Of a stretch of DNA of 64,000 bases, positions 1,592 through 55,401 are shown one piece after another. The position numbers were made by a program, and so were the translations under genes. Each line of letters starts with the position of its first letter. The stretch's first letter is position 1. The DNA lies in the IMG/VR virus record IMGVR_UViG_3300048008_000449, positions 62,001 to 126,000 of that record, one strand, 5' to 3'. The notes beneath the pieces were generated by a model, which saw only the letters and a list, made by a program, of their open reading frames with translations, did no database searches and was not told where the DNA came from.

Positions 1592-1794
1592 CTTTTTATT
1601 ACCTTCACTGTTTCAGTGTAACCGACACTTTGCTTTTTATGTTTACCGTCACCTAAGTATCCTTTTGGATCAACTGCTTTTCTAGCATCTTTTTTCTTAG
1701 TTCCGGGTGTCATAGGAAACGATATGCTGGCAAAATTACCAGACATTGTATCGCCGCCATCGGCATCTTCGGTTATTATATCATATATTTTCAT
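1588..1794 (-). CDS. Small protein with putative capsid-targeting N-terminus (MKIYDIITE)
   Basis: 68-aa ORF; start lies 5 nt downstream of TAAATA. Confidence 0.65.
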   Translation of the reverse strand: MKIYDIITEDADGGDTMSGNFASISFPMTPGTKKKDARKAVDPKGYLGDGKHKKQSVGYTETVKVIKR

Positions 1795-1799
1795 ACAAG

Positions 1800-1805
1800 T
1801 ATTTA
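1800..1805 (-). promoter_or_regulatory. Late promoter TAAATA, leaderless arrangement
   Basis: Minus strand GATAAATA-CTTGT-ATG; resembles the T4 late promoter TATAAATA. Confidence 0.7.
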
Positions 1806-1825
1806 TCTAATTAATATCAAAAGTC

Positions 1826-2584
1826 TTAGTAATTGAGTGTCGCACTCATTAACTTAACAACATTCTCCCATGTTTTAGGAATATTCATCACTAAATGCAT
1901 GCTGTTGTCCTTCCAACTATGTGTTCTGTGTGTTTTACGTGTGTCTATGTAGTATACACCACCAGCTTTAATAGGCCATATATGCCCATCTGTATGCCAT
2001 TCATATGCATCGTGTGTTACATTATTTGATATAAATGCACATACTCTAAATGTATCTCTTGTTAACATAGGCTGATCTTTATGTGGTGGAAACCAACCTC
2101 CTGCTCCACTATTAACAATCATTGTACGTCCTAGGGGTTTCCAGTAATCTAGTAATGGATGCAAACTAGATAAGTCTTTATACAATTGTGTTGGAACATT
2201 AAAGTCTAATTCACTTAGTTTACGTCCTGTACGTCTACGTGCTTCTGGCATACTTAAACTATCCCAAGGTTCATCACCTTCAAGTCCTACTACACATAGT
2301 CCTTCTCTGTTGTTTACTACACCTTCACGTCTAAGATAAGGTACCCATTTATCGTCGTATTCTTTAATTTGTTTTTTAAACCAACCTAAATCAATTTCCC
2401 ACTTTAACGGTTCAACTGTACTTAACGCTTGTAGTTGAAGTTCACATTTAATATCTTCTGCTGTTGGTTCCCATCTACTTGGATCTTCTAACCACTTATC
2501 ATAGTAGCCGCCTTGCGTTGCTTGATTTGCTTTAGGAACTGTATTAAGTTCTTTGCCGTTTTTGTCTACTTTTGAATAATCCAT
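1826..2584 (-). CDS. 2OG-Fe(II) oxygenase, Asp/Asn beta-hydroxylase-like
   Basis: FPPHKD (HxD) and distal DTRKTH His in a cupin-like pattern. Confidence 0.7.
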   Translation of the reverse strand: MDYSKVDKNGKELNTVPKANQATQGGYYDKWLEDPSRWEPTAEDIKCELQLQALSTVEPLKWEIDLGWFKKQIKEYDDKWVPYLRREGVVNNREGLCVVGLEGDEPWDSLSMPEARRRTGRKLSELDFNVPTQLYKDLSSLHPLLDYWKPLGRTMIVNSGAGGWFPPHKDQPMLTRDTFRVCAFISNNVTHDAYEWHTDGHIWPIKAGGVYYIDTRKTHRTHSWKDNSMHLVMNIPKTWENVVKLMSATLNY

Positions 2585-2585
2585 T

Positions 2586-2819
2586 TTAATCCTCTATATT
2601 TCTAATTATGTTCTTACTTATATTACGGTCCGCTTTTTTACTACTTCGTACTGCTTTATTCTTTTTTGCAATTACTTCACGTCTTTTATGCGGCTCTAGT
2701 TTACTTAAATGATTTACATCTGGAGCATTTGCCCATACTAGTGCGTCTTTCTTAGATACACTATTCATTGGACCGTGTGTATCTTTGATATCATCTTTGT
2801 TAAATTTTTTATTAGACAT
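2586..2819 (-). CDS. Hypothetical basic protein
   Basis: 77-aa ORF tightly packed in the operon. Confidence 0.6.
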   Translation of the reverse strand: MSNKKFNKDDIKDTHGPMNSVSKKDALVWANAPDVNHLSKLEPHKRREVIAKKNKAVRSSKKADRNISKNIIRNIED

Positions 2820-2827
2820 AATATTCT

Positions 2828-3208: not shown

Positions 3209-3209
3209 T

Positions 3210-5013: not shown

Positions 5014-5026
5014 AATAATGTTCCTT

Positions 5027-7456: not shown

Positions 7457-7720
7457 TTAGTCTGTGATTACAGCGTCAAAATGATCTAAGTAAAATTGCT
7501 TTAGTACATGATGATCAATATCTTTGTGAGCATTTCCAATATTCATTGTATACCATCCTAGTGCATGTCTAAACACACCGCCATTTTCTTTTTCTTTACG
7601 CAATAATATTTTATGTAATTTTTCTGCTACACGTCTGTATTTGTCTCTGCTAACAACTGGTTTAATTCTACGAACCATATTAGTCCATGGACTAGCTTCT
7701 GTTACTTCGTTAATTAACAT
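7457..7720 (-). CDS. Hypothetical protein with capsid-targeting-like N-terminus (MLINEVTE)
   Basis: 87-aa ORF overlapping the upstream stop. Confidence 0.65.
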   Translation of the reverse strand: MLINEVTEASPWTNMVRRIKPVVSRDKYRRVAEKLHKILLRKEKENGGVFRHALGWYTMNIGNAHKDIDHHVLKQFYLDHFDAVITD

Positions 7721-10700
7721 CGTCTAATTCCTCCGGTACACCAATATCTTTAACTACATTATTATCTTTAACTGCCTGTTTAACATATTGTGCTGCTTCT
7801 TTAGTCCAGTTCTTATTCATTGCTGTAAGTAGAGATTCAAAACTATTTAAATCTTTTCCACTATCTAGTTTTAATACTTTTGCAATTTCATCAGCTTGTT
7901 TCCAAGGACCGTCAATTGTTTCGTTTTTATTTTTCTTAGTATATCCTGTACCTGCTTTATTTGGAACAGGTGTACGCTTAACACGTAACAATCCTTCAGT
8001 TGGACTCCACATATAACGTAATTCTTCCATAGCACGACCGTCTTCTAGTTTAGCATCACTTTGTTGTCTATCAAGTACTGCTGCCATTGAAGCTATCATT
8101 ATATTACGGAATACACCTTTGTATTTTGATTCTTCTTCACTTGGGCTATGGTAATAAGTTTTCATCCAACCTGGATCGCCTGGCATGAAATCTACTTGTA
8201 CAAATCCTGTACGTGGTCTTCCATCTGTGTGTTCTTTATTAAAGTTTTGTATTTCAACTTTTGTCATTATAACACTTGATTTTGCAATATCTTTAATTAG
8301 TGGATTCTTTTTAAGTTTCTCAACAAATGCTGGTAATTCTTCTGGGGGTAAGTTTAATGCAACATCTATGTCGCCACTAAATTGTCTTTTTCCTACACTA
8401 CCTAATGTAAAGTTATTTAAATCTATACCTAATGATTTTTCTAACATTTCTAACGTAGGCTTTATTTCATCAATGTGTATAGCACCAACACCTGGCATTG
8501 CTCCGCCTTCGTTAAGTGTAAAGTACTTGTTAATTAAGTTTGTGTTTTCAAATGTACCATATTTTTGTGTCCATTTGTATAAGTTTGTTTTATATTTGTC
8601 ACTTACTCCAAAATCCCAAGCACGTCTTGGTCTAGTTGGTGTTTGTCCTGGTCTAGTTCTAATATTTGGTTTTGGTGCAGGAACTGGTCCTGGAGCAGGA
8701 GCAGGAGCTGGTTCTGGTGCCGGGAATGGTTCAGGAATTGGTTCTGGCGAAGGAACTGGATCTGGTGAAGGAACTGGTTCTGGTACTACGCTAGGCACTT
8801 CACTTGGAAGTGGATCTGGATCAGTTGGCTGTTCTGGTTTAGCTGGAGCCTCAGGATCTATATCTGGATCAGTAGTTGGTTCTGGTGCAACTGGGCTATC
8901 AGGCTCAGGTGTTAAATCTGGTTGTGTTGGAGATACAGGATCTATTTCCGGTGCATTGCCTGGAGCAGGATCTGTCTGTGGTTCACTTGGAAGTGGATCT
9001 GGATCAGTTGGCTGTTCTGGTTTAGCTGGAGCCTCAGGATCTATTTCTGGATCTGTAGTTGGCTCAGGTGCTTCTGGACTATCAGGATCACTTGGAGCAT
9101 CTGGTTGCTCAGGAGCATCTGGTTTTACATCAGGAGCTTCACCCGGTGCTGGATCTGTCTGTGGTTCACTTGGAAGTGGATCTGGATCAGTTGGCTGTTC
9201 TGGTTTTGCTGGAGCATCTGGATCTACTTCTGGATCAGTAGTTGGTTCCGGTGCTTCTGGATTTTCTGGTTCTTTACCTGGCTGTGGTTGTTCAGGTGAA
9301 AACGGTGTTACTTTTGGTTTCTTCTCAGGTTCTACTGGCTCTTCTTCTGGCCCTTTAGGTAATGGTTCTTGATCAGGTGCTTCTGGCTTTGCAGGTGCAT
9401 CTGGATCTATATCTGGATCTGTTGTAGGATCAGGAACTTCTGGATTCTCTGGTTCTTTACCTGGCTGTGGTTGTTCTGGAGCATCAGGTTCTATATCTGG
9501 GCCTGGCTCTAATGGTTCACTTGGAAGTGGTTCCTGTTCAGGTGCTCCTGGTCTAGCAGGCGGAAAAGGAATAACTTTAGGTCTAGTAATAGGAATTTCT
9601 ACAGGAGGTTTCTCTGGATCTATTTCTGGAGTCTTTGGTTGTTTTGGTGTATCTGGAACAATTACAGGCTTTGGAGGTAACGGATCATTAGCTGGTAATG
9701 GGTCACCATCTGGCTGTGGTACTCTCTGTGGTAATGCATCATATACTGGTGGAGCATCATTTGCTGGTAATGGAAACATTCCTATATCTTCTGGTGCTTC
9801 AGGAGATAACAATTGTTCTGGTGATGTTGTCATTACTTCTGGTGCTATTTCGTTTGCCGCACGTTGTAATGCTGGATCAACCTTACCAATTAAATCATCT
9901 AATGCTTTTTGAGTTTTTGCTTTACGCATTTTTTCAGCTAAATCATCAGCTGCTTTTTTAAGACCAGGATCAATCACTCCTTCGAGTGATTTAACAATCT
10001 CATCGTTTCTGTATCCTTGAGCAGTTTGATAATCAAAATCGTCCTTGTATCCATCTGGATCAGTTTTATATTTCTTTGTTGTTTTATACCAATCTATAAT
10101 ATCTTGCATAGCTTGGGTTGGATCTGATTTAATATAATCTTGTTGTATCTTCCATTGCAATAATTGCTCATCTTTTAGAGTACCATCACCTAATGTACTA
10201 GGAGTGATTATATTTAAAACTACACCGCCAAATATTCTAGGAAGTGCTTTCAATCCTAACTTAGATAAATTTTTCCAATCTAATTTTGGAGGCTTAACAT
10301 TGTCGTTTGCTGCAATTAACTGTTTCATCATTGCTGGATTTTTTATAAAATAGTTACTAACACTTATTCTAATTCGAGGATTATTTTTAAATTTGTCTGG
10401 AAATAGTTGTGTAACTTTACCAACTGATTGATTGGCTGATGATTTTGATACTCCATATTTTTGTTGAAAGTCTGCAGGATTCATGTTATTAAATAAGTCA
10501 ACTGCTGGCATCCCTTCCATAAGAGCCTCAATTGATTCCATGATCATTTTACTTTGTTTATTATCGCTATAAAAATTAAATGAGTTTACTTGAAATTCTT
10601 TATTTGGAGTTTTAAAGTTATTCTTACGCATAACTGTTTTTGCAATAAGATCTAATTCATTGTTGTTATTATCCCAACGTAAAACAAAAGGAATATTAAC

Positions 10701-10967
10701 ATCTGTTGCTAAATCTTTAAGAACCGCTTCAGAATCTGGACCAAGGCGAGCAATTTGCTTGCCCCAATATTTGTATTCTTGTTTAAATAAACGAGTCAGC
10801 TCACTTGCCGTAATCTGTTTTACATTACGTTCATCGTTTAATCTATCTAAAAAATGTCTTGTAAATTCAACATCAATACCAATTTTCGCAAATAATCTAT
10901 CTGCGAATACCTCAATTTGGTCCAGTTCCTGTTGCGATAATTTTCTGTCTACTTCAAATATTCTCAT
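7710..10967 (-). CDS. 1085-aa multidomain protein: N-terminal FTRHFLDR domain, Pro/Glu/Asp repeat linker, C-terminal Pol-beta-type nucleotidyltransferase
   Basis: MRIFEV start; LGSVGK...SGDIDV (GS, DxD) and a third Asp in QVDF. Confidence 0.75.
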   Translation of the reverse strand: MRIFEVDRKLSQQELDQIEVFADRLFAKIGIDVEFTRHFLDRLNDERNVKQITASELTRLFKQEYKYWGKQIARLGPDSEAVLKDLATDVNIPFVLRWDNNNNELDLIAKTVMRKNNFKTPNKEFQVNSFNFYSDNKQSKMIMESIEALMEGMPAVDLFNNMNPADFQQKYGVSKSSANQSVGKVTQLFPDKFKNNPRIRISVSNYFIKNPAMMKQLIAANDNVKPPKLDWKNLSKLGLKALPRIFGGVVLNIITPSTLGDGTLKDEQLLQWKIQQDYIKSDPTQAMQDIIDWYKTTKKYKTDPDGYKDDFDYQTAQGYRNDEIVKSLEGVIDPGLKKAADDLAEKMRKAKTQKALDDLIGKVDPALQRAANEIAPEVMTTSPEQLLSPEAPEDIGMFPLPANDAPPVYDALPQRVPQPDGDPLPANDPLPPKPVIVPDTPKQPKTPEIDPEKPPVEIPITRPKVIPFPPARPGAPEQEPLPSEPLEPGPDIEPDAPEQPQPGKEPENPEVPDPTTDPDIDPDAPAKPEAPDQEPLPKGPEEEPVEPEKKPKVTPFSPEQPQPGKEPENPEAPEPTTDPEVDPDAPAKPEQPTDPDPLPSEPQTDPAPGEAPDVKPDAPEQPDAPSDPDSPEAPEPTTDPEIDPEAPAKPEQPTDPDPLPSEPQTDPAPGNAPEIDPVSPTQPDLTPEPDSPVAPEPTTDPDIDPEAPAKPEQPTDPDPLPSEVPSVVPEPVPSPDPVPSPEPIPEPFPAPEPAPAPAPGPVPAPKPNIRTRPGQTPTRPRRAWDFGVSDKYKTNLYKWTQKYGTFENTNLINKYFTLNEGGAMPGVGAIHIDEIKPTLEMLEKSLGIDLNNFTLGSVGKRQFSGDIDVALNLPPEELPAFVEKLKKNPLIKDIAKSSVIMTKVEIQNFNKEHTDGRPRTGFVQVDFMPGDPGWMKTYYHSPSEEESKYKGVFRNIMIASMAAVLDRQQSDAKLEDGRAMEELRYMWSPTEGLLRVKRTPVPNKAGTGYTKKNKNETIDGPWKQADEIAKVLKLDSGKDLNSFESLLTAMNKNWTKEAAQYVKQAVKDNNVVKDIGVPEELDDVN
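8800..9540. repeat. Imperfect tandem repeat, 183-nt (61-aa) period, about 4 units, Pro-rich
   Basis: tcagttggctgttctgg recurs at 8821, 9004 and 9187; tctgg(t/c)tttgc at 9199 and 9382. Confidence 0.9.
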
Positions 10968-10972: not shown

Positions 10973-10978
10973 TATTTA
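10973..10978 (-). promoter_or_regulatory. Late promoter TAAATA, leaderless arrangement
   Basis: CATAAATA-GTTGT-ATG(10967). Confidence 0.7.
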
Positions 10979-10993
10979 TGCAAAACGCATACC

Positions 10994-11575: not shown

Positions 11576-12754
11576 TTATTTATTTCCTAAGTTTGCTGGA
11601 CGTGGTTTTGGTTTTACTGTTGTTGTTTTTTCTAAATCTGCTGGACGTGGTTTTGGTTTTACTGTTGTCGTAGTTTGATCTTTTCCTAAGTTTGCCGGGC
11701 GTGGTTTTGGTATATTAGTTTGTGCTGGTACTGTAGGTTTAACTACAGGTGGCTTTGGATGTGGATGTTGGTGTCCTTGGCTCATATCCGCACTTGGACT
11801 ATGTTGACCTTTTTTCATAATTATTGGAACATTGCCTCGAATAGGTTTATTAATATCTTTTTGCATTGGATCAGATTTGTACGTATCAATTGGGTGCATG
11901 TCATAGTGATCATTTGGAACTGTTTTTAATGGATTCCATGTTGATTGTCCACCAGTTTTTGTTCCTGGTCCATCAGTCTTATGTTTAATTTCATTATCAA
12001 ATTTTGGTCCTGTTTTTCTATCTTGTATAGTCATCATAGGTGTATCAGTATTTGTAGGAGGGTTCATTTTCAATTGCCATTCGTCATAATCTATTCTCTT
12101 TTCAGCTACCCTAGCCATCATTTCTTTATGGTAAGCTGCATATGCTTTATAATGAGTATTTAGACTAGGAACATCTGCTTGAATTTTATCTGTGATACCT
12201 CTGAATTTATTATCTTCAGGTTTTTCTACGTTTTGTATTGCATGCTGTAATTCATGAACGGCAGTAAATCTATTAAGACTATCTGGACTCATGGTTATTG
12301 TTTTTGTACCAGCATCCCATTGTCCTAATGTTTTGCCACCATCTTCTGAATCTTCTAAATCATCTACTATAATATTGTAATCTTTTAAAAATGGATATGC
12401 TTTGTAAAGTTCAGGATGATCAATTAGATCACTAAATTTATACTTTTTGCCTATCTTTGCTCCATGATCTTTTATTTTAAGATCTTTATCAGATACTTCT
12501 TGTCGCCAATCACCATTTGGAGTTCTAAACGTTCCTGTTTCCCACCAAATATCAACTCTACTCCAACCTTCCTTTTCCATTTTCCTTGCAAGTTTTTCTC
12601 TGCTTTTATCATATATTTTAGCTTTTGGTCCAATAAATGTAGCTAACTTATCGTCACCTGGTAACTCGCCTTTCTTACGCTTAGACGAATTCATTTCTTT
12701 ATCAGATGTTGGCAGTCTTTCAAATAACTTATTTGTAATTTCGGTTATCTTCAT
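11576..12754 (-). CDS. LPD23-like domain with zincin HExxH motif and C-terminal Pro/Thr repeats
   Basis: IWWETG...DWRQEVSD...HPELYKAYP...HELQHAIQ; MKITEI start. Confidence 0.65.
   Translation of the reverse strand: MKITEITNKLFERLPTSDKEMNSSKRKKGELPGDDKLATFIGPKAKIYDKSREKLARKMEKEGWSRVDIWWETGTFRTPNGDWRQEVSDKDLKIKDHGAKIGKKYKFSDLIDHPELYKAYPFLKDYNIIVDDLEDSEDGGKTLGQWDAGTKTITMSPDSLNRFTAVHELQHAIQNVEKPEDNKFRGITDKIQADVPSLNTHYKAYAAYHKEMMARVAEKRIDYDEWQLKMNPPTNTDTPMMTIQDRKTGPKFDNEIKHKTDGPGTKTGGQSTWNPLKTVPNDHYDMHPIDTYKSDPMQKDINKPIRGNVPIIMKKGQHSPSADMSQGHQHPHPKPPVVKPTVPAQTNIPKPRPANLGKDQTTTTVKPKPRPADLEKTTTVKPKPRPANLGNK
11583..11712. repeat. Three coding repeats of (TTTVK)PKPRPA(N/D)L
   Basis: gg(a/g)cgtggttttgg occurs three times. 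Confidence 0.85.
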
Positions 12755-15980: not shown

Positions 15981-16027
15981 TTTGTAAATCTCCTGTTACT
16001 TATATTTATCAAATAACAGAAGTTAAA

Positions 16028-25027: not shown

Positions 25028-25633
25028 TCAATTTCGCAATTCTTTATACTGGATAACTGTTTCAATTCTAATATTAAGATCATCGCTATGTGATAGTTTA
25101 AACAACATCATTGTTTCTTCACTGTTGCAAAACACAATTGGAACACTTTCTCTATTTCTATGCATAAAGTATCTAATGTGTACTATACGTCTATCATGGA
25201 AATCAAAGTTATCATATATCCATTTTATAGTAGCATTGTCTTTTTCTAGTGTACCAACACCATACTTTGGCCAACTTATTAGTTTATGTTTGTAGTTGTT
25301 ATACCATAACTTATCACGTATAACAACACTTCTATCTTTTTCGTATAATAGTTTTTTATGTGTATCACTTATTGGTTCGTGTATTTTATCTATTTTTCTA
25401 TATAAGAAATCATCAGATTTTATCTGATCAACCATATCAACGTCAGATGTATAAACTGCTAAATTATATGTTGTTTCTGATTTTTTTGTTTTAACACCAC
25501 GCCATATTGTTTGACCATCTAATCCTATTTTAGGATAATTGAAAACGTAGTTAAACGGCAGGTCTAGAAATTTAATACATGTATCAAAGTATCTGTAATA
25601 TAATGACTGCGATGGAAATACATTATTTTCCAT
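25028..25633 (-). CDS. Hypothetical protein
   Basis: Start re-called at MENNVF, overlapping the clpA stop. Confidence 0.6.
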   Translation of the reverse strand: MENNVFPSQSLYYRYFDTCIKFLDLPFNYVFNYPKIGLDGQTIWRGVKTKKSETTYNLAVYTSDVDMVDQIKSDDFLYRKIDKIHEPISDTHKKLLYEKDRSVVIRDKLWYNNYKHKLISWPKYGVGTLEKDNATIKWIYDNFDFHDRRIVHIRYFMHRNRESVPIVFCNSEETMMLFKLSHSDDLNIRIETVIQYKELRN

Positions 25634-28894: not shown

Positions 28895-29312
28895 CTGCTT
28901 CTCCTTCTTTGGCCTCTTGTCCACTTAATAATTCAACACATCTAAACACTTCATTTGATCCTTTGTTAATTTGACCTTCAATATACTCTGGTGCTTCTAT
29001 TGTAAGTTCTCCAAAGTCACGTTTGTTTCCTTGTTTATCTTGATTGAACATTGTTTCTAATTCTTTTGTTTTTTGTCTACTCTCTGCAAAATCTTCATTT
29101 AATTGTGTAAGTGTTTCGCTCATAACTTTTAAACTGTTTTGTAAACTTTCTGTTGCTGACTTTTGTATAGTTAGGCTGGTTTCAAGTTTGGCTTGATTTT
29201 CAGCATATTGTTTTATAGCTTTTTGTGTATCTTGATAATACCAATAAGCTAGTCCTGCAAACATTGCGAAAGCTGCAAACATTATAATATAGACTTTTAG
29301 TTTTGTAAACAT
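28836..29312 (-). CDS. i-spanin (Rz-like)
   Basis: N-terminal TM, long coiled coil, C-terminal Cys. Confidence 0.7.
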   Translation of the reverse strand: MFTKLKVYIIMFAAFAMFAGLAYWYYQDTQKAIKQYAENQAKLETSLTIQKSATESLQNSLKVMSETLTQLNEDFAESRQKTKELETMFNQDKQGNKRDFGELTIEAPEYIEGQINKGSNEVFRCVELLSGQEAKEGEADDKEFIDCINGNNDADSMQ

Positions 29313-29335
29313 AATATTACTTATACCTTTGACAA

Positions 29336-41452: not shown

Positions 41453-41806
41453 ACCAAATTCCCTATCAATATATTTGTGATCTATTTTTATTGGGTTGTA
41501 TTGTTCAAGCCATTTAAATACTATTTCAGGATCAAATGGTCCACAAGTATAAACGTCTAATTGCATTAATGCAGGATCACATTCGTCCCATGTGTGCAAT
41601 ACTATATGTGAAGTTTCTATAATTGTTGCAACTGTAAGTCCTCTGTTGCCAACCATATCTACATATTTTGCAAATGGCCCCATAAGTATTTTCATACCTA
41701 TATCTTCGATCAGAGTTTTTACTTGGTTGCTAGTATGAGTTTCATCACTTGGCGGATTAAGCACTTCCGCTCTAATTATAATGTGCTTATGAACGATATG
41801 GGTCAC
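41429..41806 (-). CDS. speD: S-adenosylmethionine decarboxylase proenzyme
   Basis: IETSHIVLHTW (pyruvoyl-forming Ser) and DVYTC; GTG start 5 nt after TAAATA. Confidence 0.85.
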   Translation of the reverse strand: MTHIVHKHIIIRAEVLNPPSDETHTSNQVKTLIEDIGMKILMGPFAKYVDMVGNRGLTVATIIETSHIVLHTWDECDPALMQLDVYTCGPFDPEIVFKWLEQYNPIKIDHKYIDREFGLEFLPRK

Positions 41807-41823
41807 AAGTATATTTATGAATT

Positions 41824-41900
41824 TGGCGGACCCGAGAGGATTCGAACCTCTGACCTCCTGTTTCGTAGACAGGCATTCTATCCAGCTGAACTACGGGTCC
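41824..41900 (-). tRNA. tRNA-Arg(ACG)
   Basis: CCTGT-CTACGAA-ACAGG; encoded CCA; upstream sigma70-like promoter. Confidence 0.95.
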
Positions 41901-42614: not shown

Positions 42615-42928
42615 AATGGTCCCATCTTCGTTAATGGAGGCACTTCTGTTGCCAGGTAGTACCCACCCCTACGTGCTTAGTTAAACTAAGCCGCTAATGC
42701 CATTTCTGGCGAATAATTGTCATTTGCAATTATAGTTTTTGTTCGCGGTAACGGCGCTTACATCCCGGTAACTCCACTCATCTATCCTAACAGTCGATCC
42801 TAGTTCAGCCCCATCAAAAACACACTTACAAGCAGTGATTCAATATCTCATCTATAAATGTGTTTATGGTGGAGCTGCTCGGTACTGCCCCGAGGTCCTG
42901 TCTAGTCGTCAAATCGCTTCAACGTTAC
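42615..42928 (-). ncRNA. ssrA: Two-piece (circularly permuted) tmRNA, alphaproteobacterial type; tag (A)ANDNYSPEMALAA
   Basis: Acceptor piece ...GGGGCAGTACCGAGCAGCTCCACCA (CCA at 42867), hairpin spacer, GGGGCTGAACTAGGATCGAC starting 42812 (G3:U70), tag ORF 42727-42686; TATAAATA at 42935-42942; outer ends approximate. Confidence 0.93.
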
Positions 42929-42951
42929 AAGTTATATTTATACACTCTTGT

Positions 42952-43458
42952 TTATGTTTTGTCAACCTTTTTAAAGACATATTCAAAATTTTGTGTATTT
43001 GGATTATGTTGTACTAATTTTGCACCATTGCTAATATGAAAATGTGTAGCCATTGGTGTAAGTGGAGAAAGTGTAACCAAACGTTCAATATCATTTTTAT
43101 CTTTATAATAATCTTTTAGTTTAGCTACAATTTCTCTGCCAGCTCCTTTTTTACGTGACCATACTGTGTATGCAACTGCTATACTAGCATCATCAAGTAA
43201 ATTAGCATTCTGGCTTATAATGTTTAGTTCTCTTTCACTTTGTGGAATATCGTTACAATATGCAATGCATATAATACCTTGTATCTCATCATTGGCTTTT
43301 AGACCAAATATTTTTCTACCAAATGATGTTCTAAATTCCATATCTAAATTAGGCCTTACTGGATCTTCAGAACAATCTATGTCAGTTAGTTCAACTAGCT
43401 CACTAGATGATACCCACTTAAAGAAGTTATCAATTGAATCTTTAATTACTTTCAACAA
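42952..43458 (-). CDS. Hypothetical protein, GNAT-like
   Basis: YTVWS.KKGAGR, VTLSP...FHISNGA. Confidence 0.55.
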   Translation of the reverse strand: MLKVIKDSIDNFFKWVSSSELVELTDIDCSEDPVRPNLDMEFRTSFGRKIFGLKANDEIQGIICIAYCNDIPQSERELNIISQNANLLDDASIAVAYTVWSRKKGAGREIVAKLKDYYKDKNDIERLVTLSPLTPMATHFHISNGAKLVQHNPNTQNFEYVFKKVDKT

Positions 43459-43998: not shown

Positions 43999-44093
43999 TG
44001 ATGTTCTCCTATAGTTAATCAATTGTCATAATTATAAGGTGTTTTTTACATAAAGTCAAGCATTTTTATAGTTTTTTAATAAATAGTTATAAT

Positions 44094-44405
44094 ATGTTAG
44101 AATCAGAAGTATTACATTTTCAACAATTTATATCACCAATTCTAGGATTAGTGTTTACTGGAATAGTAGCACTATGGATTAAAGATCTGGTAGGCGATTT
44201 AGTAGCAAGCATACGTTGGAAAATGAAGCCAGGATTTGAACCAGGTGATGTTGTATATTTAGATGGTGAAAGAGCTACTATTATTAGTATAGGATATAGA
44301 GAAACTATATTTGAAGTTGATAATGGAAGAGGCAAAGTATGGAGATATATTTACAATACTCGTATTCCTACACACAGATTGGAGAAGTTGATTCATGAAA
44401 AATAA
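44094..44405 (+). CDS. Small membrane protein with MscS-like beta domain
   Basis: TM helix, then FEPGDVVYLDG...IISIG..T. Confidence 0.55.
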   Translation: MLESEVLHFQQFISPILGLVFTGIVALWIKDLVGDLVASIRWKMKPGFEPGDVVYLDGERATIISIGYRETIFEVDNGRGKVWRYIYNTRIPTHRLEKLIHEK

Positions 44406-45150
44406 AACTATAAATTGGAGCCTTGCAGAATTATGTGCATGGATATGTGAATATGCATATGAAGATAAGCAAGCAATGAAAACATACCTATCTGCTAACA
44501 AAATAAAACATACAAATTTAAAATTCTTTGAACAAGATAACGCACAAGCATATGGAATTACAATGCATGATTATATTGTTATTGCATTTAGAGGAACAGA
44601 GCCACATCAATTTAAAGATATCTTAGCTGATATCAAAGCATGGCCTGCTGATGCAGAAACAAAAGGACATGTACATTCAGGATTCAAAGGCGAATTAGAT
44701 AAACTATATCCTAATATTATAAAGTGGTTAGGTAAAAAAGTAACTACTAAAAAAATTGTAATTACTGGACATAGTTTAGGAGCTGCAATGGCAACTATAT
44801 GTGCAAGTAGATTTCATCAGTTAGGTGCTGATCAAGTATTATATACTTACGGATGTCCTAGAACAGGAAATAAAGAATGGGGTAAACAATTTGATGACAT
44901 AGAAGCATATCGTTTTGTTAATAACAATGATATTGTATGCCAAGTTCCACCATTTGGATATTATTCACACATAGGTGAATTATACTATATGTCTTATACT
45001 AATCGTATTAGTAACAAAATGAATTGGTGGCAACGTTTTGGAGATAAAGTAAGAGGAAGATGCAAAGCATGGAGTAAGTTTGAATTCTTCGATAGTTTAT
45101 ATGATCACCTAGGTGCTCATTACATTAAAAAAATTACTTCTCGTAAATAA
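44395..45150 (+). CDS. Class 3 lipase
   Basis: AFRGT, VHSGF, GHSLG, DIV..VP, C-terminal His. Confidence 0.9.
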   Translation: MKNKTINWSLAELCAWICEYAYEDKQAMKTYLSANKIKHTNLKFFEQDNAQAYGITMHDYIVIAFRGTEPHQFKDILADIKAWPADAETKGHVHSGFKGELDKLYPNIIKWLGKKVTTKKIVITGHSLGAAMATICASRFHQLGADQVLYTYGCPRTGNKEWGKQFDDIEAYRFVNNNDIVCQVPPFGYYSHIGELYYMSYTNRISNKMNWWQRFGDKVRGRCKAWSKFEFFDSLYDHLGAHYIKKITSRK

Positions 45151-46108
45151 GTTGTGTTTCATCAATACCGTGTTTCCACGTACCTTCTAAACTTTTAACA
45201 ACACAAGATCCCATTTTATTAATTGTAAGTTCTAATTGTTCTTGACTACCTACGAGTTCTGCTTTTAATACAGAATAACATGGTTGTGGATTCTTTTCTA
45301 TGGCAAGTATACACATATGTTCTAATCCATTATAACGCCAATTGTAACCAATACGTGTATCTTTGCCTTCAATAAATCCATCGTAACGTATTACATCCCA
45401 TAATATAAACTTAACTTTATCTGGCTCTGCTTCTAATACTTTTTCATTGCTAGTTTCTGCAATTTTAGGACCATCTGCAACAACTGCATGTCCGTCATAA
45501 ACAGTACTTTGTCCTTGTGCTAGATTTTTAAATTGTTCGTCATACATATCCCAACCAAGTATTGCATTACCATCTTTATCATTATAGGTAACTGTATCAT
45601 TGTGTATAATAATATTAATACGCAAACCTCTAGAACATTGCTGTACTGAAGCTGGAAATAATTCAAATGATTTGTAATCTTGTGTGGAAGGTGTGCTTAT
45701 AGGATAGCCCATTATTAATCCGGGCCATACTTTGTTAATTGTATCTATTTCTAAACCTAAGTCTAAATCTTGTCTGATTACAGATACAAATATTGGAGCA
45801 TCATATTGATTCATATGTTGCATAGCCATATTACATGAAAAGTACTTTTCTTTTTCAGTGTACTTCTCTTGAATAATATCATCTATTATGTGAGTGAATT
45901 TTGCAATACCCATACCAAACTTTTTACCCATTCGCTTTGGAGTAAAATCTGGCATGTTGAGATTGATCCACGGATTATAAGAAATACTTATAATCCGCTT
46001 CAATATAACTTCTTTGCTGTATTGCTCTAAGATATCTAGTTTATCTTCTTGCGAAGGAGCTACAGTTAAATTTTGTATAATTTCTGATAATAGATGTATT
46101 TTGCTCAT
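45134..46108 (-). CDS. T4 gp30-like DNA ligase paralog lacking KxDG and the OB domain, likely inactive
   Basis: YNP, DLDLG..TINKVWPGLI, YDG, LWDVI, VVKS..G.W; motif I reads QQCSRG. Confidence 0.6.
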   Translation of the reverse strand: MSKIHLLSEIIQNLTVAPSQEDKLDILEQYSKEVILKRIISISYNPWINLNMPDFTPKRMGKKFGMGIAKFTHIIDDIIQEKYTEKEKYFSCNMAMQHMNQYDAPIFVSVIRQDLDLGLEIDTINKVWPGLIMGYPISTPSTQDYKSFELFPASVQQCSRGLRINIIIHNDTVTYNDKDGNAILGWDMYDEQFKNLAQGQSTVYDGHAVVADGPKIAETSNEKVLEAEPDKVKFILWDVIRYDGFIEGKDTRIGYNWRYNGLEHMCILAIEKNPQPCYSVLKAELVGSQEQLELTINKMGSCVVKSLEGTWKHGIDETQLIYEK

Positions 46109-46187
46109 ACAACTATTTATGCGATTAAAACTATACTTTATTTTGGTTTATTAATAAACTCAAGTTCGTCATCAGTGTAAGGCCACA

Positions 46188-49594: not shown

Positions 49595-50020
49595 TTAATC
49601 TATGTTAATTGTTCTTGGTTTCTTTTCGTCTGGAATATTCTGTTCCAATGTAACTACTAAGATTCCGTTATCTAGTTTAGAAGATGTTACTTCTACATAA
49701 TCAGCTAAACTAAATTCTCTATTAAAGTTTCTAGTTCCAATGCCTTTGTGTAAGTATTCAACTTCATTATCGCTTTCTTTTTTTTCTGCTGAAATTGACA
49801 ATGTGTTTCCATCTTGTTTAATTGTTAGTTCGTCTTTATCAAACCCTGCAACTGCTAAACTAATCGTATAGCTATTATCGCTTTCCTTTACAATATTGTA
49901 TGGGGGATAACCACCTGTTACGTTAGCTGAAAATGCATGTTGCATATCATCAAACATCTTATCAAAGCCTATAGTAGCTTTATAAAAGTCTGGTAGGTTT
50001 AATGTTGTTAATCTAGTCAT
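49595..50020 (-). CDS. Small heat-shock protein Hsp20 (IbpA-like)
   Basis: IGFD, YPPYNI, LAVAGF, YLHKGI, PRTINI. Confidence 0.95.
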   Translation of the reverse strand: MTRLTTLNLPDFYKATIGFDKMFDDMQHAFSANVTGGYPPYNIVKESDNSYTISLAVAGFDKDELTIKQDGNTLSISAEKKESDNEVEYLHKGIGTRNFNREFSLADYVEVTSSKLDNGILVVTLEQNIPDEKKPRTINID

Positions 50021-50131: not shown

Positions 50132-50380
50132 TTAATTATTTGTATACTTGTCTTTAGCAATACGTCTACGATGTCTAGCACGTCCTGCCGCTTCTGCTTT
50201 AAGTCTTTTTTCCGTATTACTTATAAAGTGTTTACGGTCACGAACTTCTTGCATAATACCATCTTTAGCAATCATCTTTTTTAATCTTCTCATTGCTTGT
50301 TCAACGTTATTATTTCTAACTTCAACTGTTAATCCGTTTCCGCCTTTTCTGTCTCTGTCTCTGTGATTATTATTTGCCAT
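50132..50380 (-). CDS. rpsU: 30S ribosomal protein bS21
   Basis: VEVRNNNVEQAMRRLKK...G...EVRDRKHF. Confidence 0.9.
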   Translation of the reverse strand: MANNNHRDRDRKGGNGLTVEVRNNNVEQAMRRLKKMIAKDGIMQEVRDRKHFISNTEKRLKAEAAGRARHRRRIAKDKYTNN

Positions 50381-50383
50381 AAT

Positions 50384-52545: not shown

Positions 52546-54232
52546 TATTAGTATCTTTGATCATTTCTTTGTATACTTGTGTAAGAACTGTCTGGTCAGC
52601 TCTTGATATTAATTCTTTTAATTCTAGTGATGCATCGTCAGCAAAAATATCTTCAATTTTCTTTTTAATAACACCTTCAGTTTGTAAATGTCCACTTCCT
52701 GGCCAACTTCCTGTGCTACGCATTTCTGCTACTATCTTAGTCACTAGTTCTTGTTTGTCTTTTTTTAATGTCTTTTTTGACTTATTATTTAGATCGTATT
52801 GTTGTGCATCTAGTAGATATTCTCTGCGACCTTTTTCGTTAATAGTATATTCCTTACCTTCTTTGTCTATGAAAACTTCTACTTCTTTTGCAGGAACTTC
52901 ATCTTGTACAACAGGCTCGGGGCTAATCGTTTCGTCTTCTTTATCACTAGTATCATCTTCTTCAATGCTGGGTCGATCTTCGTTGTCTCCCATTTCATCT
53001 TCTTGTGTTTCTTCATATATTGTATTTATTTCGGTCTTGCTAGGCCTGGGAAACCTTTCTACTAACGTTATACCTGATATAACAAGTACAATAGCTAGTG
53101 GGTCAAAAACCAAAACAAGTAATAATATGACAAATCTAACTGCATCTTCTAACATGCTTCTAGTAGGATCTGATCCATATATTAGTTCAGCAATATATTT
53201 AACAGGACCAACTTCTGCTTCTAATGCTCTGCTTTGTCCTTCTAGTTCAAATTTTTGTTCATATAAACCATCTAGTGTTGCAGTGGCATCAGTAATAATA
53301 CTACGTTGTGTTAGTATCTGGTCTGTGCTATCGTCTTGCTGTCCTTGTCCAAGTTGGGCTCTAAGTCTAGTAATTAATTCATTCGAATCAGCAATTTGTT
53401 GTTCTGCTAATGCTCGTAATCTTTTAATTTCTGTTCTAGCATCTTTGATAACTTGATCATCATTGTTGTCTCTAATTTTATTTAACTGAAAAATAGCTAC
53501 CTGTCTATCTTTAGTTTTAGTTTCTCTAAAATCTTTAACTGCTTTTGCAGTTTTAGAACCATATCTTCCGTCTTGAGATGCTCCTATTAATCCTTGTAGC
53601 TTTTTAATTTCTTCATTAGCAATATACTGCTCAATAAGTTTTAATTGATTATCAATACTTTCAATTTGATTTTTAAAAGGTAATTCTGCTACTTTTGATT
53701 CTTCTTTTAATTCTTTAATAATTTCATTTTGTTCATCAATAGATGGTTGCACACCTTTATATGCATTTTCAATTCTAGTTGTTTCTTCACGTATTTTTTG
53801 CTGTAGTTCATCATCAATAGATGTATCTAACGTTTCAAGTTTAATAATTTTATCATCAGCTTTTTGTATTACTGTTTTCTCTCTAGCAATACTTGTATCA
53901 ATACGTTCTATAAGAGCGACATTCTCAGTGGCAAGGCTTGTTTGTTCTATGTGTGCTTTTGAAAGAAACCCAAATATACCCATGCTTGTAATAAACATAA
54001 GTAACACCACTGCCACTGAGAGATATGTCTTAATAAGTATGGGTGCCTGTCGCCAATGTAAATGTAACCACACTGCAGACGTTAGTTTACCAATTTCTAG
54101 TACGGTACCCATAATAATAATTGGTACTATGGCACTGGCAAAAATTGCAACAAGACCAACAATGCTGTAGTAGGCCGCCACTGCACTGATTGATAATGCT
54201 ACTAGAATTGTCCAATAACCAAAATACCTCAT
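52535..54232 (-). CDS. Membrane protein: 3 N-terminal TMs, long coiled coil with an embedded PG-binding-like motif, C-terminal TM and acidic tail
   Basis: TSMGIFGFLSKAH, EVGPVKY, VFDPLA; LQGLIG..DGRYGSKT..AV. Confidence 0.7.
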   Translation of the reverse strand: MRYFGYWTILVALSISAVAAYYSIVGLVAIFASAIVPIIIMGTVLEIGKLTSAVWLHLHWRQAPILIKTYLSVAVVLLMFITSMGIFGFLSKAHIEQTSLATENVALIERIDTSIAREKTVIQKADDKIIKLETLDTSIDDELQQKIREETTRIENAYKGVQPSIDEQNEIIKELKEESKVAELPFKNQIESIDNQLKLIEQYIANEEIKKLQGLIGASQDGRYGSKTAKAVKDFRETKTKDRQVAIFQLNKIRDNNDDQVIKDARTEIKRLRALAEQQIADSNELITRLRAQLGQGQQDDSTDQILTQRSIITDATATLDGLYEQKFELEGQSRALEAEVGPVKYIAELIYGSDPTRSMLEDAVRFVILLLVLVFDPLAIVLVISGITLVERFPRPSKTEINTIYEETQEDEMGDNEDRPSIEEDDTSDKEDETISPEPVVQDEVPAKEVEVFIDKEGKEYTINEKGRREYLLDAQQYDLNNKSKKTLKKDKQELVTKIVAEMRSTGSWPGSGHLQTEGVIKKKIEDIFADDASLELKELISRADQTVLTQVYKEMIKDTNNDN

Positions 54233-54234
54233 TA

Positions 54235-54588
54235 TTATTTTCCTATGTTGTAACGAATAGCATGGCCTTCTGTGACCAATAATTCGTTAATGTTAATTTC
54301 ATTATTTTTTTCATCTCGGATTTTGATTGTTCCAAGGATACGACCATACTTTCCTCTTTTGTTAAGGATAGTGGTAACTTCAAACTGTTTAGGTAAAAGA
54401 TCCATAAGTCGTTGTTTAGCATCTAAGCCTTTTTGTTTTACAACAATGTCACTTGATCTGCTATCTGGAGTATCCACTCCGTAAAGTTTTAAACGTTGTT
54501 TAATACATAAATCAAAACCTAGATCAATTTCTAAGTCTAATGTATCACCGTTAATAACTCTAATTAATTTTGCGTTGTATGTATACAT
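54235..54588 (-). CDS. Thermonuclease (SNase)-family protein
   Basis: VINGDT, RL.GVDTP, KYGRILG, LVTEGHA. Confidence 0.8.
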   Translation of the reverse strand: MYTYNAKLIRVINGDTLDLEIDLGFDLCIKQRLKLYGVDTPDSRSSDIVVKQKGLDAKQRLMDLLPKQFEVTTILNKRGKYGRILGTIKIRDEKNNEININELLVTEGHAIRYNIGK

Positions 54589-54663
54589 AAAAATCTTTCA
54601 CATTCTTTAAACAGCTATACTTAAACTGTATAGTATTTATTGTTATATTGTTTAGTTAATATA

Positions 54664-55353
54664 CTATGTTTTGCTATAATTAGCAAGCCATAATTTTGCC
54701 GCTCTACCGGTTGGTGGTTTTGATAGAAATTTACGGATTTCTCTGTATACTTGATCAAAATTTTCTTTTCGATCTGGATCTTCCAAACCTCCACTATTGT
54801 CTACTACGTGGAAATTAGCCGCTCCAAAAACCTGTTGAAACTTCATGATATTTTCTTGTACTTTTTGCCACATCATTGAAACAATGTCATTGCTTAATCT
54901 ACGTTGTCTTGATTGATTACGTTCTTGTGCAACGGATTCACTTGTGTTAACAAATAGCATCATAGTTGTATATCCTAATTTTTGTAACTGTTTAGTAGTC
55001 TCAGAAACCTTTTGTACATTCTTTCCTGTACCGTCAATAATTAATCCAAGACGTCCATCTAAATACAATCCTTCTTTTGTCTTTGTAATCTCTTTAGCAC
55101 GATTGCGAAGTTCTTGTCCTTGATCACTACTAATTGCATCAGGATCAGACAAATCAAAGTTATGTTTGTTTGCCAAGTATTCGTATGCATCATCACTGTT
55201 AATAGATTTTAATCCTGTTCCTGACAATAACTTGCCTGCCACATAGCTTTTGCCCGAGCCAGGACCACCTGCTAGGAACACCGCTTTAAATATGTGAGGA
55301 TCATTTGGACCTTCTAGTACTTGCTCACGTTCTAATATATCATGTATTTTCAT
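54664..55353 (-). CDS. P-loop kinase (zeta-toxin/PNK-like) with capsid-targeting-like N-terminus
   Basis: GGPGSGKS, INSD, IIDGTG, RNQSR.R; MKIHDILE; start 5 nt after TAAATA (55359-55364). Confidence 0.8.
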   Translation of the reverse strand: MKIHDILEREQVLEGPNDPHIFKAVFLAGGPGSGKSYVAGKLLSGTGLKSINSDDAYEYLANKHNFDLSDPDAISSDQGQELRNRAKEITKTKEGLYLDGRLGLIIDGTGKNVQKVSETTKQLQKLGYTTMMLFVNTSESVAQERNQSRQRRLSNDIVSMMWQKVQENIMKFQQVFGAANFHVVDNSGGLEDPDRKENFDQVYREIRKFLSKPPTGRAAKLWLANYSKT

Positions 55354-55401
55354 ACTTGTATTTATTAAAATAATACAATATATATTATATAGTGATAAAG
55401 A

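What the first reader, a model, noticed from the sequence alone, without database searches (positions are those of the whole stretch)
1794..55364. Late promoter placed exactly 5 nt before start codons: predicted leaderless late mRNAs
Seen on the minus strand: TAAATA-CTTGT-ATG (1794), TAAATA-GTTGT-ATG (10967), TAAGTA-ATATT-ATG (29312), TAAATA-TACTT-GTG (41806), TAAATA-GTTGT-ATG (46108) and TAAATA-CAAGT-ATG (55353). The spacing is identical and leaves no room for an SD. Other TAAATA promoters (5032, 16003, 19246, 22358, 25022) have normal SD leaders. Established: T4-type late transcripts start a few nt after TATAAATA. Inference: there are two classes of late mRNA, leaderless and SD-led, whose ratio could be set translationally.
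Basis: partly seen in the sequence, partly recalled or inferred. Interest (0 to 1): 0.74.

Follow-up and report, generated by a model that had tools for sequence, protein, structure and literature searches.

The report
Late-type promoters abutting start codons
In this uncultured marine giant phage, a T4-style promoter box sits exactly five bases before the start codon of about ten genes, a conserved layout that predicts messenger RNAs beginning at their own AUG, without a ribosome-binding leader; this is not yet shown by direct 5'-end mapping.

Summary
All six quoted sites read as described. Across the 204.8-kb contig, the distance from ATAAATA to called gene starts has a sharp peak at 5 nt: 8 starts against 0.6 expected (P=3e-7). 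Distances 9-17 are empty, and 18-31 nt holds a broad group that mostly carries Shine-Dalgarno (SD) sequences.

The same peak appears in an independent relative (about 75% nucleotide identity). Orthologues at 63-80% protein identity keep the box and the 5-nt gap while flanks and spacer change.

The T4 late box spans -13 to -6, so a 5-nt spacer puts +1 on the A of ATG. The d=5 starts have no SD, with two or three exceptions, and no SD-bearing alternative start downstream. SD-led orthologues of the terminase gene begin at the same codon.

In metatranscriptomes, RNA at one SD-led promoter ends within 2 nt of the predicted start. RNA from the gene upstream of the terminase gene falls to zero at a terminator. 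Close relatives encode a gp55-family late sigma factor.

No 5' end was mapped at a d=5 site. The leaderless reading is therefore a well-supported inference (about 0.7). Translational control of the class ratio is untested. It is a new variant of known kinds.

The parts
1800..1806 (-). ATAAATA box, 5-nt spacer (1795-1799), ATG at 1794. It precedes a 68-aa gene (1588-1794).
   Evidence: The orthologue in G001 (65% aa identity) keeps ATAAATActtgtATG.
10973..10979 (-). ATAAATA box, spacer gttgt, ATG at 10967. It precedes a 1085-aa gene (7710-10967) of unknown function.
   Evidence: There is no SD and no in-frame alternative start within 40 codons. L031 (80% aa) and the G001 orthologue keep the layout. 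L033 has an SD-coupled start instead.
29318..29324 (-). ATAAGTA variant box, spacer atatt, ATG at 29312. It precedes a spanin-like 158-aa gene (28836-29312). Ambiguous member.
   Evidence: AAGG lies 13 nt upstream and the upstream gene ends 23 nt away. ATAAGTA-N5-ATG is a genuine variant in front of the terminase genes of a whole related clade.
41812..41818 (-). ATAAATA box, spacer tactt, GTG at 41806. It lies directly after tRNA-Arg (41824-41900) and precedes an AdoMet-decarboxylase gene (41429-41806).
   Evidence: The GTG is the only plausible start, because the conserved HKHxIxR motif follows at once. Three close relatives keep the layout. More distant relatives have the box 9, 11 or about 20 nt upstream, with or without an SD.
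44079..44085 (+). ATAAATA box with 8 nt to the ATG at 44094, giving a predicted 3-nt leader. It precedes a 103-aa gene (44094-44405).
   Evidence: G001 keeps ATAAATAgttatattATG.
46114..46120 (-). ATAAATA box, spacer gttgt, ATG at 46108. It precedes an ATP-dependent DNA ligase gene (45134-46108).
   Evidence: All 5 IMG/VR relatives (78-100% aa) and G001 (63% aa) keep the layout.
55359..55365 (-). ATAAATA box, spacer caagt, ATG at 55353. It precedes a P-loop kinase gene of the Zeta_toxin/AAA_33 family (54664-55353).
   Evidence: Twenty of 21 relatives (65-100% aa) keep [A/C]TAAATA-N5-ATG with seven different spacers and diverged upstream sequence. One relative (L028) has CATAAATA plus an SD leader.
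57015..57021 (-). ATAAATA 5 nt before the ATG at 57009 (68-aa ORF). Probably not leaderless.
   Evidence: the TAA of the box is the stop of the upstream gene, and AAGGA lies 11 nt upstream. G001 has GGAGGTAAATAgttatATG.
16003..16009 (-). SD-led member of the same promoter class: ATAAATAtaagtAacAGGAGatttacaaaATG (start 15980).
   Evidence: Others in the window, box first base > start: 5038>5013, 19252>19216, 22364>22302, 25028>24996, 30360>30327, 54640>54588, 62512>62481.
42633..42979 (-). Alphaproteobacterial-type two-piece tmRNA gene. TTGACA-N17-TATAAATA lies within its 5' part (42935-42966).
   Evidence: It shows the same box combined with a -35 element. It is context, not part of the leaderless class.

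Best explanation
The contig is a fragment (CheckV estimate 56% complete) of an uncultured marine jumbo myophage. It is distantly T4-like, and its nearest isolates by terminase are PA5oct-type phages.

Its genes are served by a promoter that lacks a -35 element, with consensus [G/C][A/C]TAAATA. This is the local form of the T4/cyanomyovirus late box TATAAATA/NATAAATA. It is most likely read by a gp55-family sigma factor, which close relatives encode.

At most promoters the box lies 18-31 nt before the start codon, and the leader carries an SD. At about ten genes on the contig the box lies exactly 5 nt before the start codon. Five or six of these are in the window, and the terminase large subunit gene lies outside it.

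The T4 box occupies -13 to -6. Transcription should therefore begin on the A of the AUG and give a leaderless mRNA, which must be translated by SD-independent initiation on a 5'-terminal AUG.

Shown:
- the spacing peak and its conservation;
- the absence of an SD;
- the correctness of the start codons;
- promoter activity, and a transcription start within 2 nt of prediction, at one SD-led member;
- termination of upstream transcripts before the terminase gene.

Inferred:
- the exact +1 at the 5-nt sites;
- translation of those RNAs from their first codon;
- the identity of the sigma factor.
For: Spacing:
- Genome-wide peak at 5 nt, no sites at 9-17 nt, and an SD-led hump at 18-31 nt.
- The same peak (9 sites) in the independent relative G001.
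- TAAATA-N5-ATG occurs 47 times against 12 for the reversed control in five related contigs.

Geometry: the T4 review gives the first box base as -13 ('A(-13) in place of T'), so the box spans -13..-6 and +1 is the 6th nt after it (PMC2988020).

Both classes share the same flanks: A or C at -1, G/C at -2, T then A at the 5th and 6th nt after the box, and no -35.

No SD, and no downstream in-frame start with a good SD, at 9 of the 12 d=5 sites.

Start-codon assignment: SD-led terminase orthologues start at the same codon, (M)AVDTKL. L044 and L045 encode identical terminase proteins, one behind ATAAATA-N5-ATG and the other behind ATAAATA-N18 with AGGAGG.

Conservation through sequence change: kinase 20/21 loci, ligase 5/5 plus G001, the 68-aa gene and the 1085-aa gene.

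Terminator hairpin plus T-run directly upstream of the box at the terminase gene here, in many relatives, and at g155060.

RNA:
- At the SD-led promoter g161626, contigs of runs X17 and X18 (one sample) end at the 8th nt after the box, with about zero depth upstream.
- Depth of the gene upstream of the terminase gene is 47-370 and falls to 0 in all four runs before the terminase gene.

Boxes precede virion protein, neck, sheath and tail-fibre genes.

A gp55-family sigma (phrog_12791 E 1e-85 to 1e-94; phrog_234 E about 1e-22) is present in 3 of 5 related contigs, including G004, whose terminase is 93% identical.
Against: - No RNA 5' end was observed at any 5-nt site. The terminase gene had almost no RNA in the four runs.
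- The one mapped boundary is at the 8th nt after the box, not the 6th. If that were the true +1 everywhere, RNAs from the 5-nt sites would start at the G of ATG and lack the start codon.
- No gp55 or gp33 homologue was found on this contig.
- The box also precedes non-structural genes, so 'late' is not established.
- Several 5-nt sites lie 4-80 nt behind an upstream same-strand gene with no terminator, so polycistronic transcripts probably also cover them.
- A conserved cataatataat lies about 30 nt upstream of the kinase gene and could be another promoter.
- One site uses GTG, which is a poor leaderless start in E. coli (own knowledge).
- Cultured relatives (PA5oct, Vibrio 2.275.O, Phosso, Melnitz) show no enrichment of the pattern.
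- The host, and its capacity for leaderless translation, are unknown.
Confidence: 0.68

Rival explanations
1. These genes are mainly translated as internal cistrons of longer transcripts from upstream promoters or read-through. Initiation would be SD-independent and helped by the A/U-rich box, for example through ribosomal protein S1. The box-to-ATG spacing would then reflect a translational rather than a transcriptional constraint, or the promoter would add only a minor leaderless fraction.
For: Several sites follow an upstream same-strand gene by 4-80 nt without a recognisable terminator. A conserved TATAAT-like element lies about 30 nt upstream of the kinase gene. The region is A/U-rich.
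Against: The identical heptamer acts as a promoter-like element 18-31 nt upstream of SD-led genes and shows an RNA boundary just after it. A/U-rich enhancers do not need a fixed 5-nt register. The terminase gene and g155060 have a terminator hairpin directly before the box. RNA depth falls from more than 100 to 0 before the terminase gene. In relatives the spacer and flanks change but the register does not.
Confidence: 0.15
2. Transcription from these boxes starts 1-2 nt further downstream, at the 7th or 8th nt. RNAs from the 5-nt sites would then lack the AUG and serve only downstream cistrons or internal starts. The overlap of promoter and start codon would be a packing economy or a way to switch the first gene off late.
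For: The only mapped RNA boundary lies at the 8th nt after the box, in two runs of one sample.
Against: Assembled RNA-seq contigs usually lack the last few 5' nucleotides, so the boundary is a lower bound. T4 numbering puts +1 at the 6th nt. The 6th nt is A in 7 of the 8 d=5 sites (all ATG starts) and in 21 of 38 SD-led sites, preceded by T. No downstream in-frame start with an SD exists. The hypothesis predicts no selection for an exact 5-nt register or for ATG, yet both are conserved.
Confidence: 0.1
3. Chance or compositional artefact: TAAATA is common in a 34% GC genome and contains a TAA stop codon, so some copies fall next to start codons.
For: One site (57009) is explained this way, since the TAA is the upstream stop. 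At g178233 the upstream stop overlaps the 3' end of the box. Control hexamers reach 8-9 hits at some distances.
Against: Poisson P = 3e-7 for the heptamer, and controls reach at most 3. An independent genome shows the same peak. The register is conserved in orthologues at 63-80% protein identity. Most sites are intergenic with the upstream stop elsewhere.
Confidence: 0.03

Closest known systems
T4 late promoters (TATAAATA at -13..-6, gp55/gp33/gp45) and the cyanomyovirus late box NATAAATA
   Same: An 8-bp A/T box without a -35 element. Box core TAAATA with a variable first base, as in S-PM2/Syn9 (PMC2984593). It precedes virion genes. A gp55-family sigma is present in close relatives. The RNA boundary lies about one helical turn after the start of the box.
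   Different: In the papers I read, the box is described in front of late genes without any note of its register to the start codon, and no search found a report of leaderless mRNAs from T4-type late promoters. Here a fifth of the boxes abut the start codon. The first base is A or C, rarely T. The box also precedes non-structural genes. The sigma factor is about 305 aa, against 185-188 aa for gp55.
Thermus phage phiYS40 middle/late transcripts
   Same: A lytic phage that makes most middle and late mRNAs without a leader from promoters next to the start codon. The host's IF2/IF3 balance is reported to shift in favour of leaderless translation (PMC3594737, citing Sevostyanova 2007).
   Different: The host phylum differs, and in Deinococcus-Thermus leaderless expression is the norm. 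The promoter type also differs. Here only a minority of genes are leaderless and most keep strong SD sequences.
'-10 region adjacent to ORF' expression mode of Deinococcus-Thermus (PMC12340547), and single cases such as lambda cI from PRM
   Same: A -10-like element a few bp upstream of the ORF, sufficient as a promoter, giving a 5'-terminal AUG.
   Different: Those are host sigma-A promoters of cellular genomes, or a single regulatory gene. Here it is a phage-specific box in a clade of marine jumbo phages, and it alternates with SD-led versions of the same gene among near-identical phages.
Other jumbo phages with mapped transcription starts (phiKZ, AR9)
   Same: Large phage genomes with AT-rich phage-specific promoters.
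   Different: phiKZ has no leaderless transcript (PMC8244752). AR9 has 5' UTRs of 26-491 nt (PMC5312081). The nearest isolate, PA5oct, shows no enrichment of the motif.

Membership tests
T4-type late promoter | Conserved 8-bp TATAAATA-like box with no conserved -35 element | tested here: met
   Consensus [G/C][A/C]TAAATA from 38 SD-led and 8 d=5 sites, with no conservation further upstream. The first base is A or C rather than T, as in the cyanomyovirus NATAAATA.
T4-type late promoter | Box at -13..-6, so transcription starts at the 6th nt after it | tested here: inconclusive
   One SD-led promoter has RNA contigs ending at the 8th nt after the box, with about zero depth upstream. This comes from two runs of one sample and from contigs only. 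It is consistent within 2 nt but is not nucleotide-exact.
T4-type late promoter | The phage encodes a gp55-family late sigma factor | tested here: inconclusive
   Not found on this contig, which is only 56% complete. Found in 3 of 5 related contigs: phrog_12791 E 1e-85 to 1e-94 and phrog_234 E about 1e-22. One of them is G004, whose terminase is 93% identical.
T4-type late promoter | gp33 co-activator and gp45 clamp coupling | tested here: inconclusive
   gp33 was not found on the contig. A gp45 query gave no tblastn hit, while the clamp loader gp44 is present. Relatives were not searched.
T4-type late promoter | Precedes late (virion and packaging) genes | tested here: met
   Boxes precede virion structural proteins, a neck protein, the sheath, tail-fibre genes and the terminase. 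They also precede a ligase, a kinase, a CCA-adding enzyme and a halogenase. No timing data exist.
Leaderless mRNA | The primary 5' end coincides with the first base of the start codon, or lies within a few nt of it | tested here: inconclusive
   Predicted from the geometry. The single read-laying run, on the terminase region, found almost no terminase RNA. No other site could be laid.
Leaderless mRNA | No SD or other leader between promoter and start codon | tested here: met
   The 5-nt spacer leaves no room. The SD score is 0 at 9 of 12 sites. The exceptions are 29312, 57009 and g178233.
Leaderless mRNA | The codon abutting the promoter is the true start | tested here: met
   It is the first in-frame start after a stop, and no downstream start has a good SD. 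SD-led terminase orthologues start at the same codon. N-termini are conserved in orthologues.
Leaderless mRNA | Ribosomes initiate on the 5'-terminal AUG | not testable with these tools
   This needs toeprinting, ribosome profiling or reporter assays. The host is unknown, although the alphaproteobacterial-type tmRNA hints at an alphaproteobacterium.

The most novel reading that the evidence does not exclude
A widespread clade of marine jumbo phages switches individual genes between SD-led and leaderless translation simply by sliding a gp55-type promoter against the start codon. The terminase tree needs at least 8 such changes, and one pair of phages has identical proteins in the two modes. The phage would then shift ribosome selectivity between the two mRNA classes during infection with its own translation genes (ribosomal protein bS21, tmRNA), so that the leaderless set forms a separately controlled translational regulon.
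Probability: 0.12. Interest if true: 0.8.

Novelty: new variant of a known kind. Interest (0 to 1): 0.58.

Why it matters
Leaderless mRNAs are well known in Actinobacteria, Deinococcus-Thermus, archaea and a few phage genes. T4-type late promoters are a textbook system. I found no report of the two combined. Here they form a conserved, register-exact architecture in an abundant group of uncultured marine phages: at least 595 terminase relatives are in IMG/VR.

If confirmed, three things follow:
- T4-type late transcription can deliver mRNAs straight to SD-independent initiation.
- There is a simple sequence rule (box, N5, ATG) for annotating starts and transcription units in such metagenomic phages.
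- Natural matched pairs exist, with the same protein expressed in leaderless or SD-led mode, for studying the cost and benefit of each mode.

It also bears on what phage-encoded bS21 and tmRNA do. The practical limit is that neither the phage nor its host is cultured.

Tried and rejected
- **Nucleotide search** of a window stretch against the phage collection found nothing.
- **gp55 and gp33 searches** on the contig, by protein and by PHROG model, all came back empty. PHROG scans of genes next to uvsW, where Melnitz has gp55, found no sigma factor.
- **Read laying.** The first attempt found the machine busy. The terminase gene turned out to be almost unexpressed in all four metatranscriptomes, so no 5' end was obtained for a leaderless site.
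- **The look-up of encoding contigs** for the kinase returned only DNA metagenome contigs and no transcript-like contigs.
- **Cultured relatives.** A pattern census in PA5oct, Vibrio 2.275.O, Phosso and Melnitz showed no enrichment, so there is no cultured model for the feature.
- **5'-end structure and composition.** The first 40 nt of the d=5 genes are only slightly less structured than those of other genes (mean -1.8 against -2.8 kcal/mol, SD 2.4). The A content of codons 2-6 is the same, so neither is informative.
- **Literature.** Searches on leaderless with T4-like, cyanophage, gp55 or jumbo phage gave no report of this arrangement. The phiYS40 primary paper is not held.
- **Rejected: wrong start codons.** Orthologue N-termini agree with the assigned starts.
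- **Rejected: the box as a host sigma-70 -10 element.** There is no -35 element and the fit to TATAAT is poor. The exception is the tmRNA promoter.

Full report
**What the window is**

The window is bases 62,001-126,000 of a 204,772-bp linear IMG/VR viral contig. GC content is 34% and CheckV estimates 56% completeness. Most genes lie on the minus strand.

The phage is distantly T4-like. tblastn with proteins of Methylophilales phage Melnitz finds the terminase large subunit, sheath, gp43, UvsX, gp41, UvsW, gp44, gp4 and gp15. By terminase the nearest isolates are Pseudomonas phage PA5oct (55.6% aa), then Sinorhizobium phage Phosso, Agrobacterium phage Atu_ph07, Vibrio phage 2.275.O and GAP32-like phages. 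So the contig is a fragment of a marine jumbo myophage.

IMG/VR holds at least 595 terminase relatives. The phage occurs in many seawater metagenomes and in several marine metatranscriptomes. It carries four tRNAs, an alphaproteobacterial-type two-piece tmRNA and a ribosomal protein bS21 gene.

**Checking the observation**

Each has a 5-nt spacer between TAAATA (TAAGTA at 29312) and the start codon. All are preceded by an A, so the box is ATAAATA. The five comparison promoters carry AAGGA, AGGAG or AAGGAG in their leaders.

On the whole contig, the distance from TAAATA to an ATG opening an ORF of 60 aa or more has 12 cases at 5 nt. Most neighbouring distances hold 0-1 (6 at 8 nt), and there is a broad hump at about 18-30 nt.

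With my own gene calls (275 genes), 8 called starts lie exactly 5 nt after ATAAATA. One each lies at 6 and 8 nt, none at 9-17 nt, and about 22 lie at 18-31 nt, mostly with an SD. The expectation per distance is 0.62. Poisson P is 3e-7, or 2e-5 after correction. The 20 permuted heptamers of the same composition never exceed 3 at any distance.

Further d=5 sites outside the called set are g128761 and +1059. Outside the window the class includes the terminase large subunit gene (g163193), g155060 and g178233.

**Quality of the individual sites**

- At 9 of the 12 d=5 sites there is no SD-like run before the start. The start is the first in its frame, and no downstream in-frame start within 40 codons has a good SD.
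- 29312 has AAGG 13 nt upstream and uses ATAAGTA.
- 57009 has AAGGA 11 nt upstream, and the TAA of its box is the upstream gene's stop.
- g178233 has the upstream stop overlapping the 3' end of the box.
- 41806 begins with GTG. This is the only plausible start, because the conserved HKHxIxR motif follows immediately and more distant orthologues start two codons later.

**What the box is**

An alignment of 38 SD-led and 8 d=5 sites gives the same extended consensus for both classes. There is G/C at -2 and A (sometimes C) at -1 relative to TAAATA, followed by an A/T-rich spacer. The 5th nt after the box is mostly T and the 6th mostly A. Nothing is conserved in the -35 region.

This matches the T4 late promoter as described in the review. 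That promoter is an 8-bp box about one helical turn upstream of the start, with no -35 conservation, and with variants having 'A(-13) in place of T' (PMC2988020). It also matches the NATAAATA late box of cyanomyoviruses (PMC2984593).

The boxes precede virion structural proteins, a neck protein, the sheath, tail-fibre genes and the terminase. They also precede a DNA ligase, a P-loop kinase, AdoMet decarboxylase, a CCA-adding enzyme and a halogenase. 'Late' is therefore plausible but not established for every member.

No gp55 or gp33 homologue lies on this contig. However, three of five large related contigs encode a 303-313-aa gp55-family sigma (phrog_12791 E 1e-85 to 1e-94; phrog_234 E about 1e-22). 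One of them is G004, whose terminase is 93% identical to ours. The missing half of our genome is the likely location.

**Geometry**

The first base of the T4 box is -13, so the box spans -13 to -6 and +1 is the 6th nt after it. With a 5-nt spacer, +1 is the A of the start codon. This exact coincidence, and the absence of any site at 9-17 nt, is what a leaderless class and an SD-led class would produce. An SD-led mRNA needs roughly 13 nt or more of leader.

**RNA evidence**

I used it on g159800-165799 (L128), which holds the terminase start behind a terminator and two SD-led promoters. Four marine metatranscriptomes from three samples were laid, as contigs only.

- At the SD-led promoter GATAAATAcattaAaGgaat..., which precedes a virion protein gene, contigs of X17 and X18 (depth 19 and 25, one sample) both end at the G that is the 8th nt after the box. 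Depth immediately upstream is about 0-1.6. The box is thus associated with a sharp RNA 5' boundary within 2 nt of the predicted +1. Assembled contigs usually lack a few terminal bases, so this is a lower bound.
- The 563-aa gene upstream of the terminase gene has depth 47-370. Depth falls to 0 in all four runs in the bin that follows the terminator CAGCGTAG...CTACGCTGTTTTT. The terminase gene is therefore not made by read-through. Its own promoter must lie in the roughly 30 nt between the terminator and the ATG, where the only recognisable element is the box.
- The terminase gene itself had almost no RNA, so its 5' end could not be seen. This is the main gap in the case.

**Comparative evidence**

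*Kinase gene (55353).* Twenty of 21 IMG/VR loci at 65-100% protein identity keep [A/C]TAAATA-N5-ATG. The spacer takes seven different forms and the upstream sequence diverges. One locus has CATAAATA followed by an SD leader.

*Ligase gene (46108).* All 5 loci keep the layout, and so does G001 at 63% aa.

*1085-aa gene (10967).* Two relatives keep the layout and one has an SD-coupled start.

*68-aa gene (1794).* The layout is kept in G001.

*G001.* This 183.8-kb contig aligns to ours over only about 80 kb at about 75% identity. It shows its own peak of 9 sites at 5 nt. Five related contigs together hold 47 TAAATA-N5-ATG against 12 for the reversed control.

*Terminase gene.* Of 73 usable loci:
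- 31 have TAA[A/G]TA-N5-ATG.
- 2 have a spacer of 7.
- 12 have the box 13-40 nt upstream, 8 of them with an SD.
- 28 have no box, and most of these are SD-coupled to the upstream gene.

All begin with the same N-terminus. This confirms that the codon abutting the box is the true start. Many box-N5 versions sit directly behind a terminator hairpin. On a maximum-likelihood tree, the leaderless-type state needs 10 changes, with at least 8 forced by well-supported branches. L044 and L045 encode identical proteins in the two modes.

Cultured relatives (PA5oct, Vibrio 2.275.O, Phosso, Melnitz) show no enrichment, so the feature is specific to this uncultured marine clade.

**Mechanism and confidence**

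The best-supported reading is that these genes are transcribed from a gp55-type promoter whose +1 is the A of the AUG. That gives leaderless mRNAs, which the host ribosome must initiate on without an SD. I put this at about 0.68.

The rivals are:
- mainly polycistronic, SD-independent translation, with the box as an A/U-rich element (0.15);
- a start 2 nt further downstream, so that the RNA lacks the AUG (0.10);
- chance (0.03).

The phage's bS21 and tmRNA genes make it worth testing. From my own knowledge, ribosomes lacking S21 and other proteins were reported to favour leaderless mRNAs (Kaberdina et al. 2009). That is a lead, not evidence.

**Comparison with the known**

Leaderless middle and late mRNAs are known for Thermus phage phiYS40, with a reported IF2/IF3 shift (PMC3594737). 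A -10 element adjacent to the ORF is a common expression mode in Deinococcus-Thermus (PMC12340547). Among jumbo phages with mapped starts, phiKZ has no leaderless transcript and AR9 has UTRs of 26-491 nt. The PA5oct study reports only sigma-70-like promoters.

Five literature searches found no report of leaderless mRNAs from T4-type late promoters. I therefore rate this a new variant of known kinds.

Noticed in passing
window 42633-42979 (-), promoter 42935-42966: Alphaproteobacterial-type two-piece (permuted) tmRNA (RF01849, 123 bits; RF04321, 111 bits). A textbook TTGACA-N17-TATAAATA lies within its 5' part. The +1 predicted from the box (42929) is 1 nt from the start of the permuted-tmRNA model match (42928). 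This hints at an alphaproteobacterial host, as argued for Melnitz and the pelagimyophages (PMC9004378).
   Followed up: partly
window 50132-50380 (-): Phage-encoded ribosomal protein bS21 (phrog_21469, E 3e-11). An Hsp20 gene lies next to it at about 49601-49975 (45% identical to the Melnitz Hsp20). Relevant to any translational control of leaderless against SD-led mRNAs.
   Followed up: partly
L044 vs L045 (IMG/VR relatives of the terminase gene, G000 161637-163193): Two phages encode identical terminase large subunits. One has ATAAATA-N5-ATG behind a terminator. The other has ATAAATA, an AGGAGG leader and a GTG start. This is a natural matched pair for comparing the two initiation modes.
   Followed up: partly
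L125 (PA5oct NC_071039.1 128846-130441): The annotated terminase start of PA5oct lies inside a terminator hairpin (aaagggtgttATGcaccctttt). Homology begins at the ATG 27 nt downstream, directly after the T-run and without an SD or a TAAATA box. The start is probably mis-annotated, and the gene may also lack a leader.
   Followed up: no
G000 163270-164961 (L128:3471-5162, -): A 563-aa gene just upstream of the terminase gene is by far the most abundant RNA in the laid region (word depth up to about 370), yet it has no PHROG or Pfam match.
   Followed up: partly
window 25623-27887 (-), 12751-14598 (-), 55402-55989 (-): Unusual accessory genes: a 754-aa ClpA/ClpB-like ATPase (phrog_4871, E 5e-226), a CCA-adding enzyme fused to an HD/5'-deoxyribonucleotidase domain, and a ClpP-family protease upstream of the leaderless-type kinase gene.
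   Followed up: no
about 30 nt upstream of window 55353, and L011-L027: A cataatataat-like element is conserved upstream of the kinase gene in relatives, although the surrounding sequence diverges. It may be a second, host-type promoter or another signal.
   Followed up: no
G002:84989-85792, G003:35551-36360, G004:75915-76739: The clade's gp55-family late sigma factor is 303-313 aa, much longer than T4 or Melnitz gp55 (185-188 aa). It matches phrog_12791 end to end.
   Followed up: no
G000 180184-181389 (-) and 1059-1739 (+): A tryptophan-halogenase-like gene (phrog_2928, E 5e-83) lies behind an SD-led box. A radical-SAM-like 226-aa ORF (below the Pfam cut-off) lies behind a d=5 box on the plus strand.
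   Followed up: no
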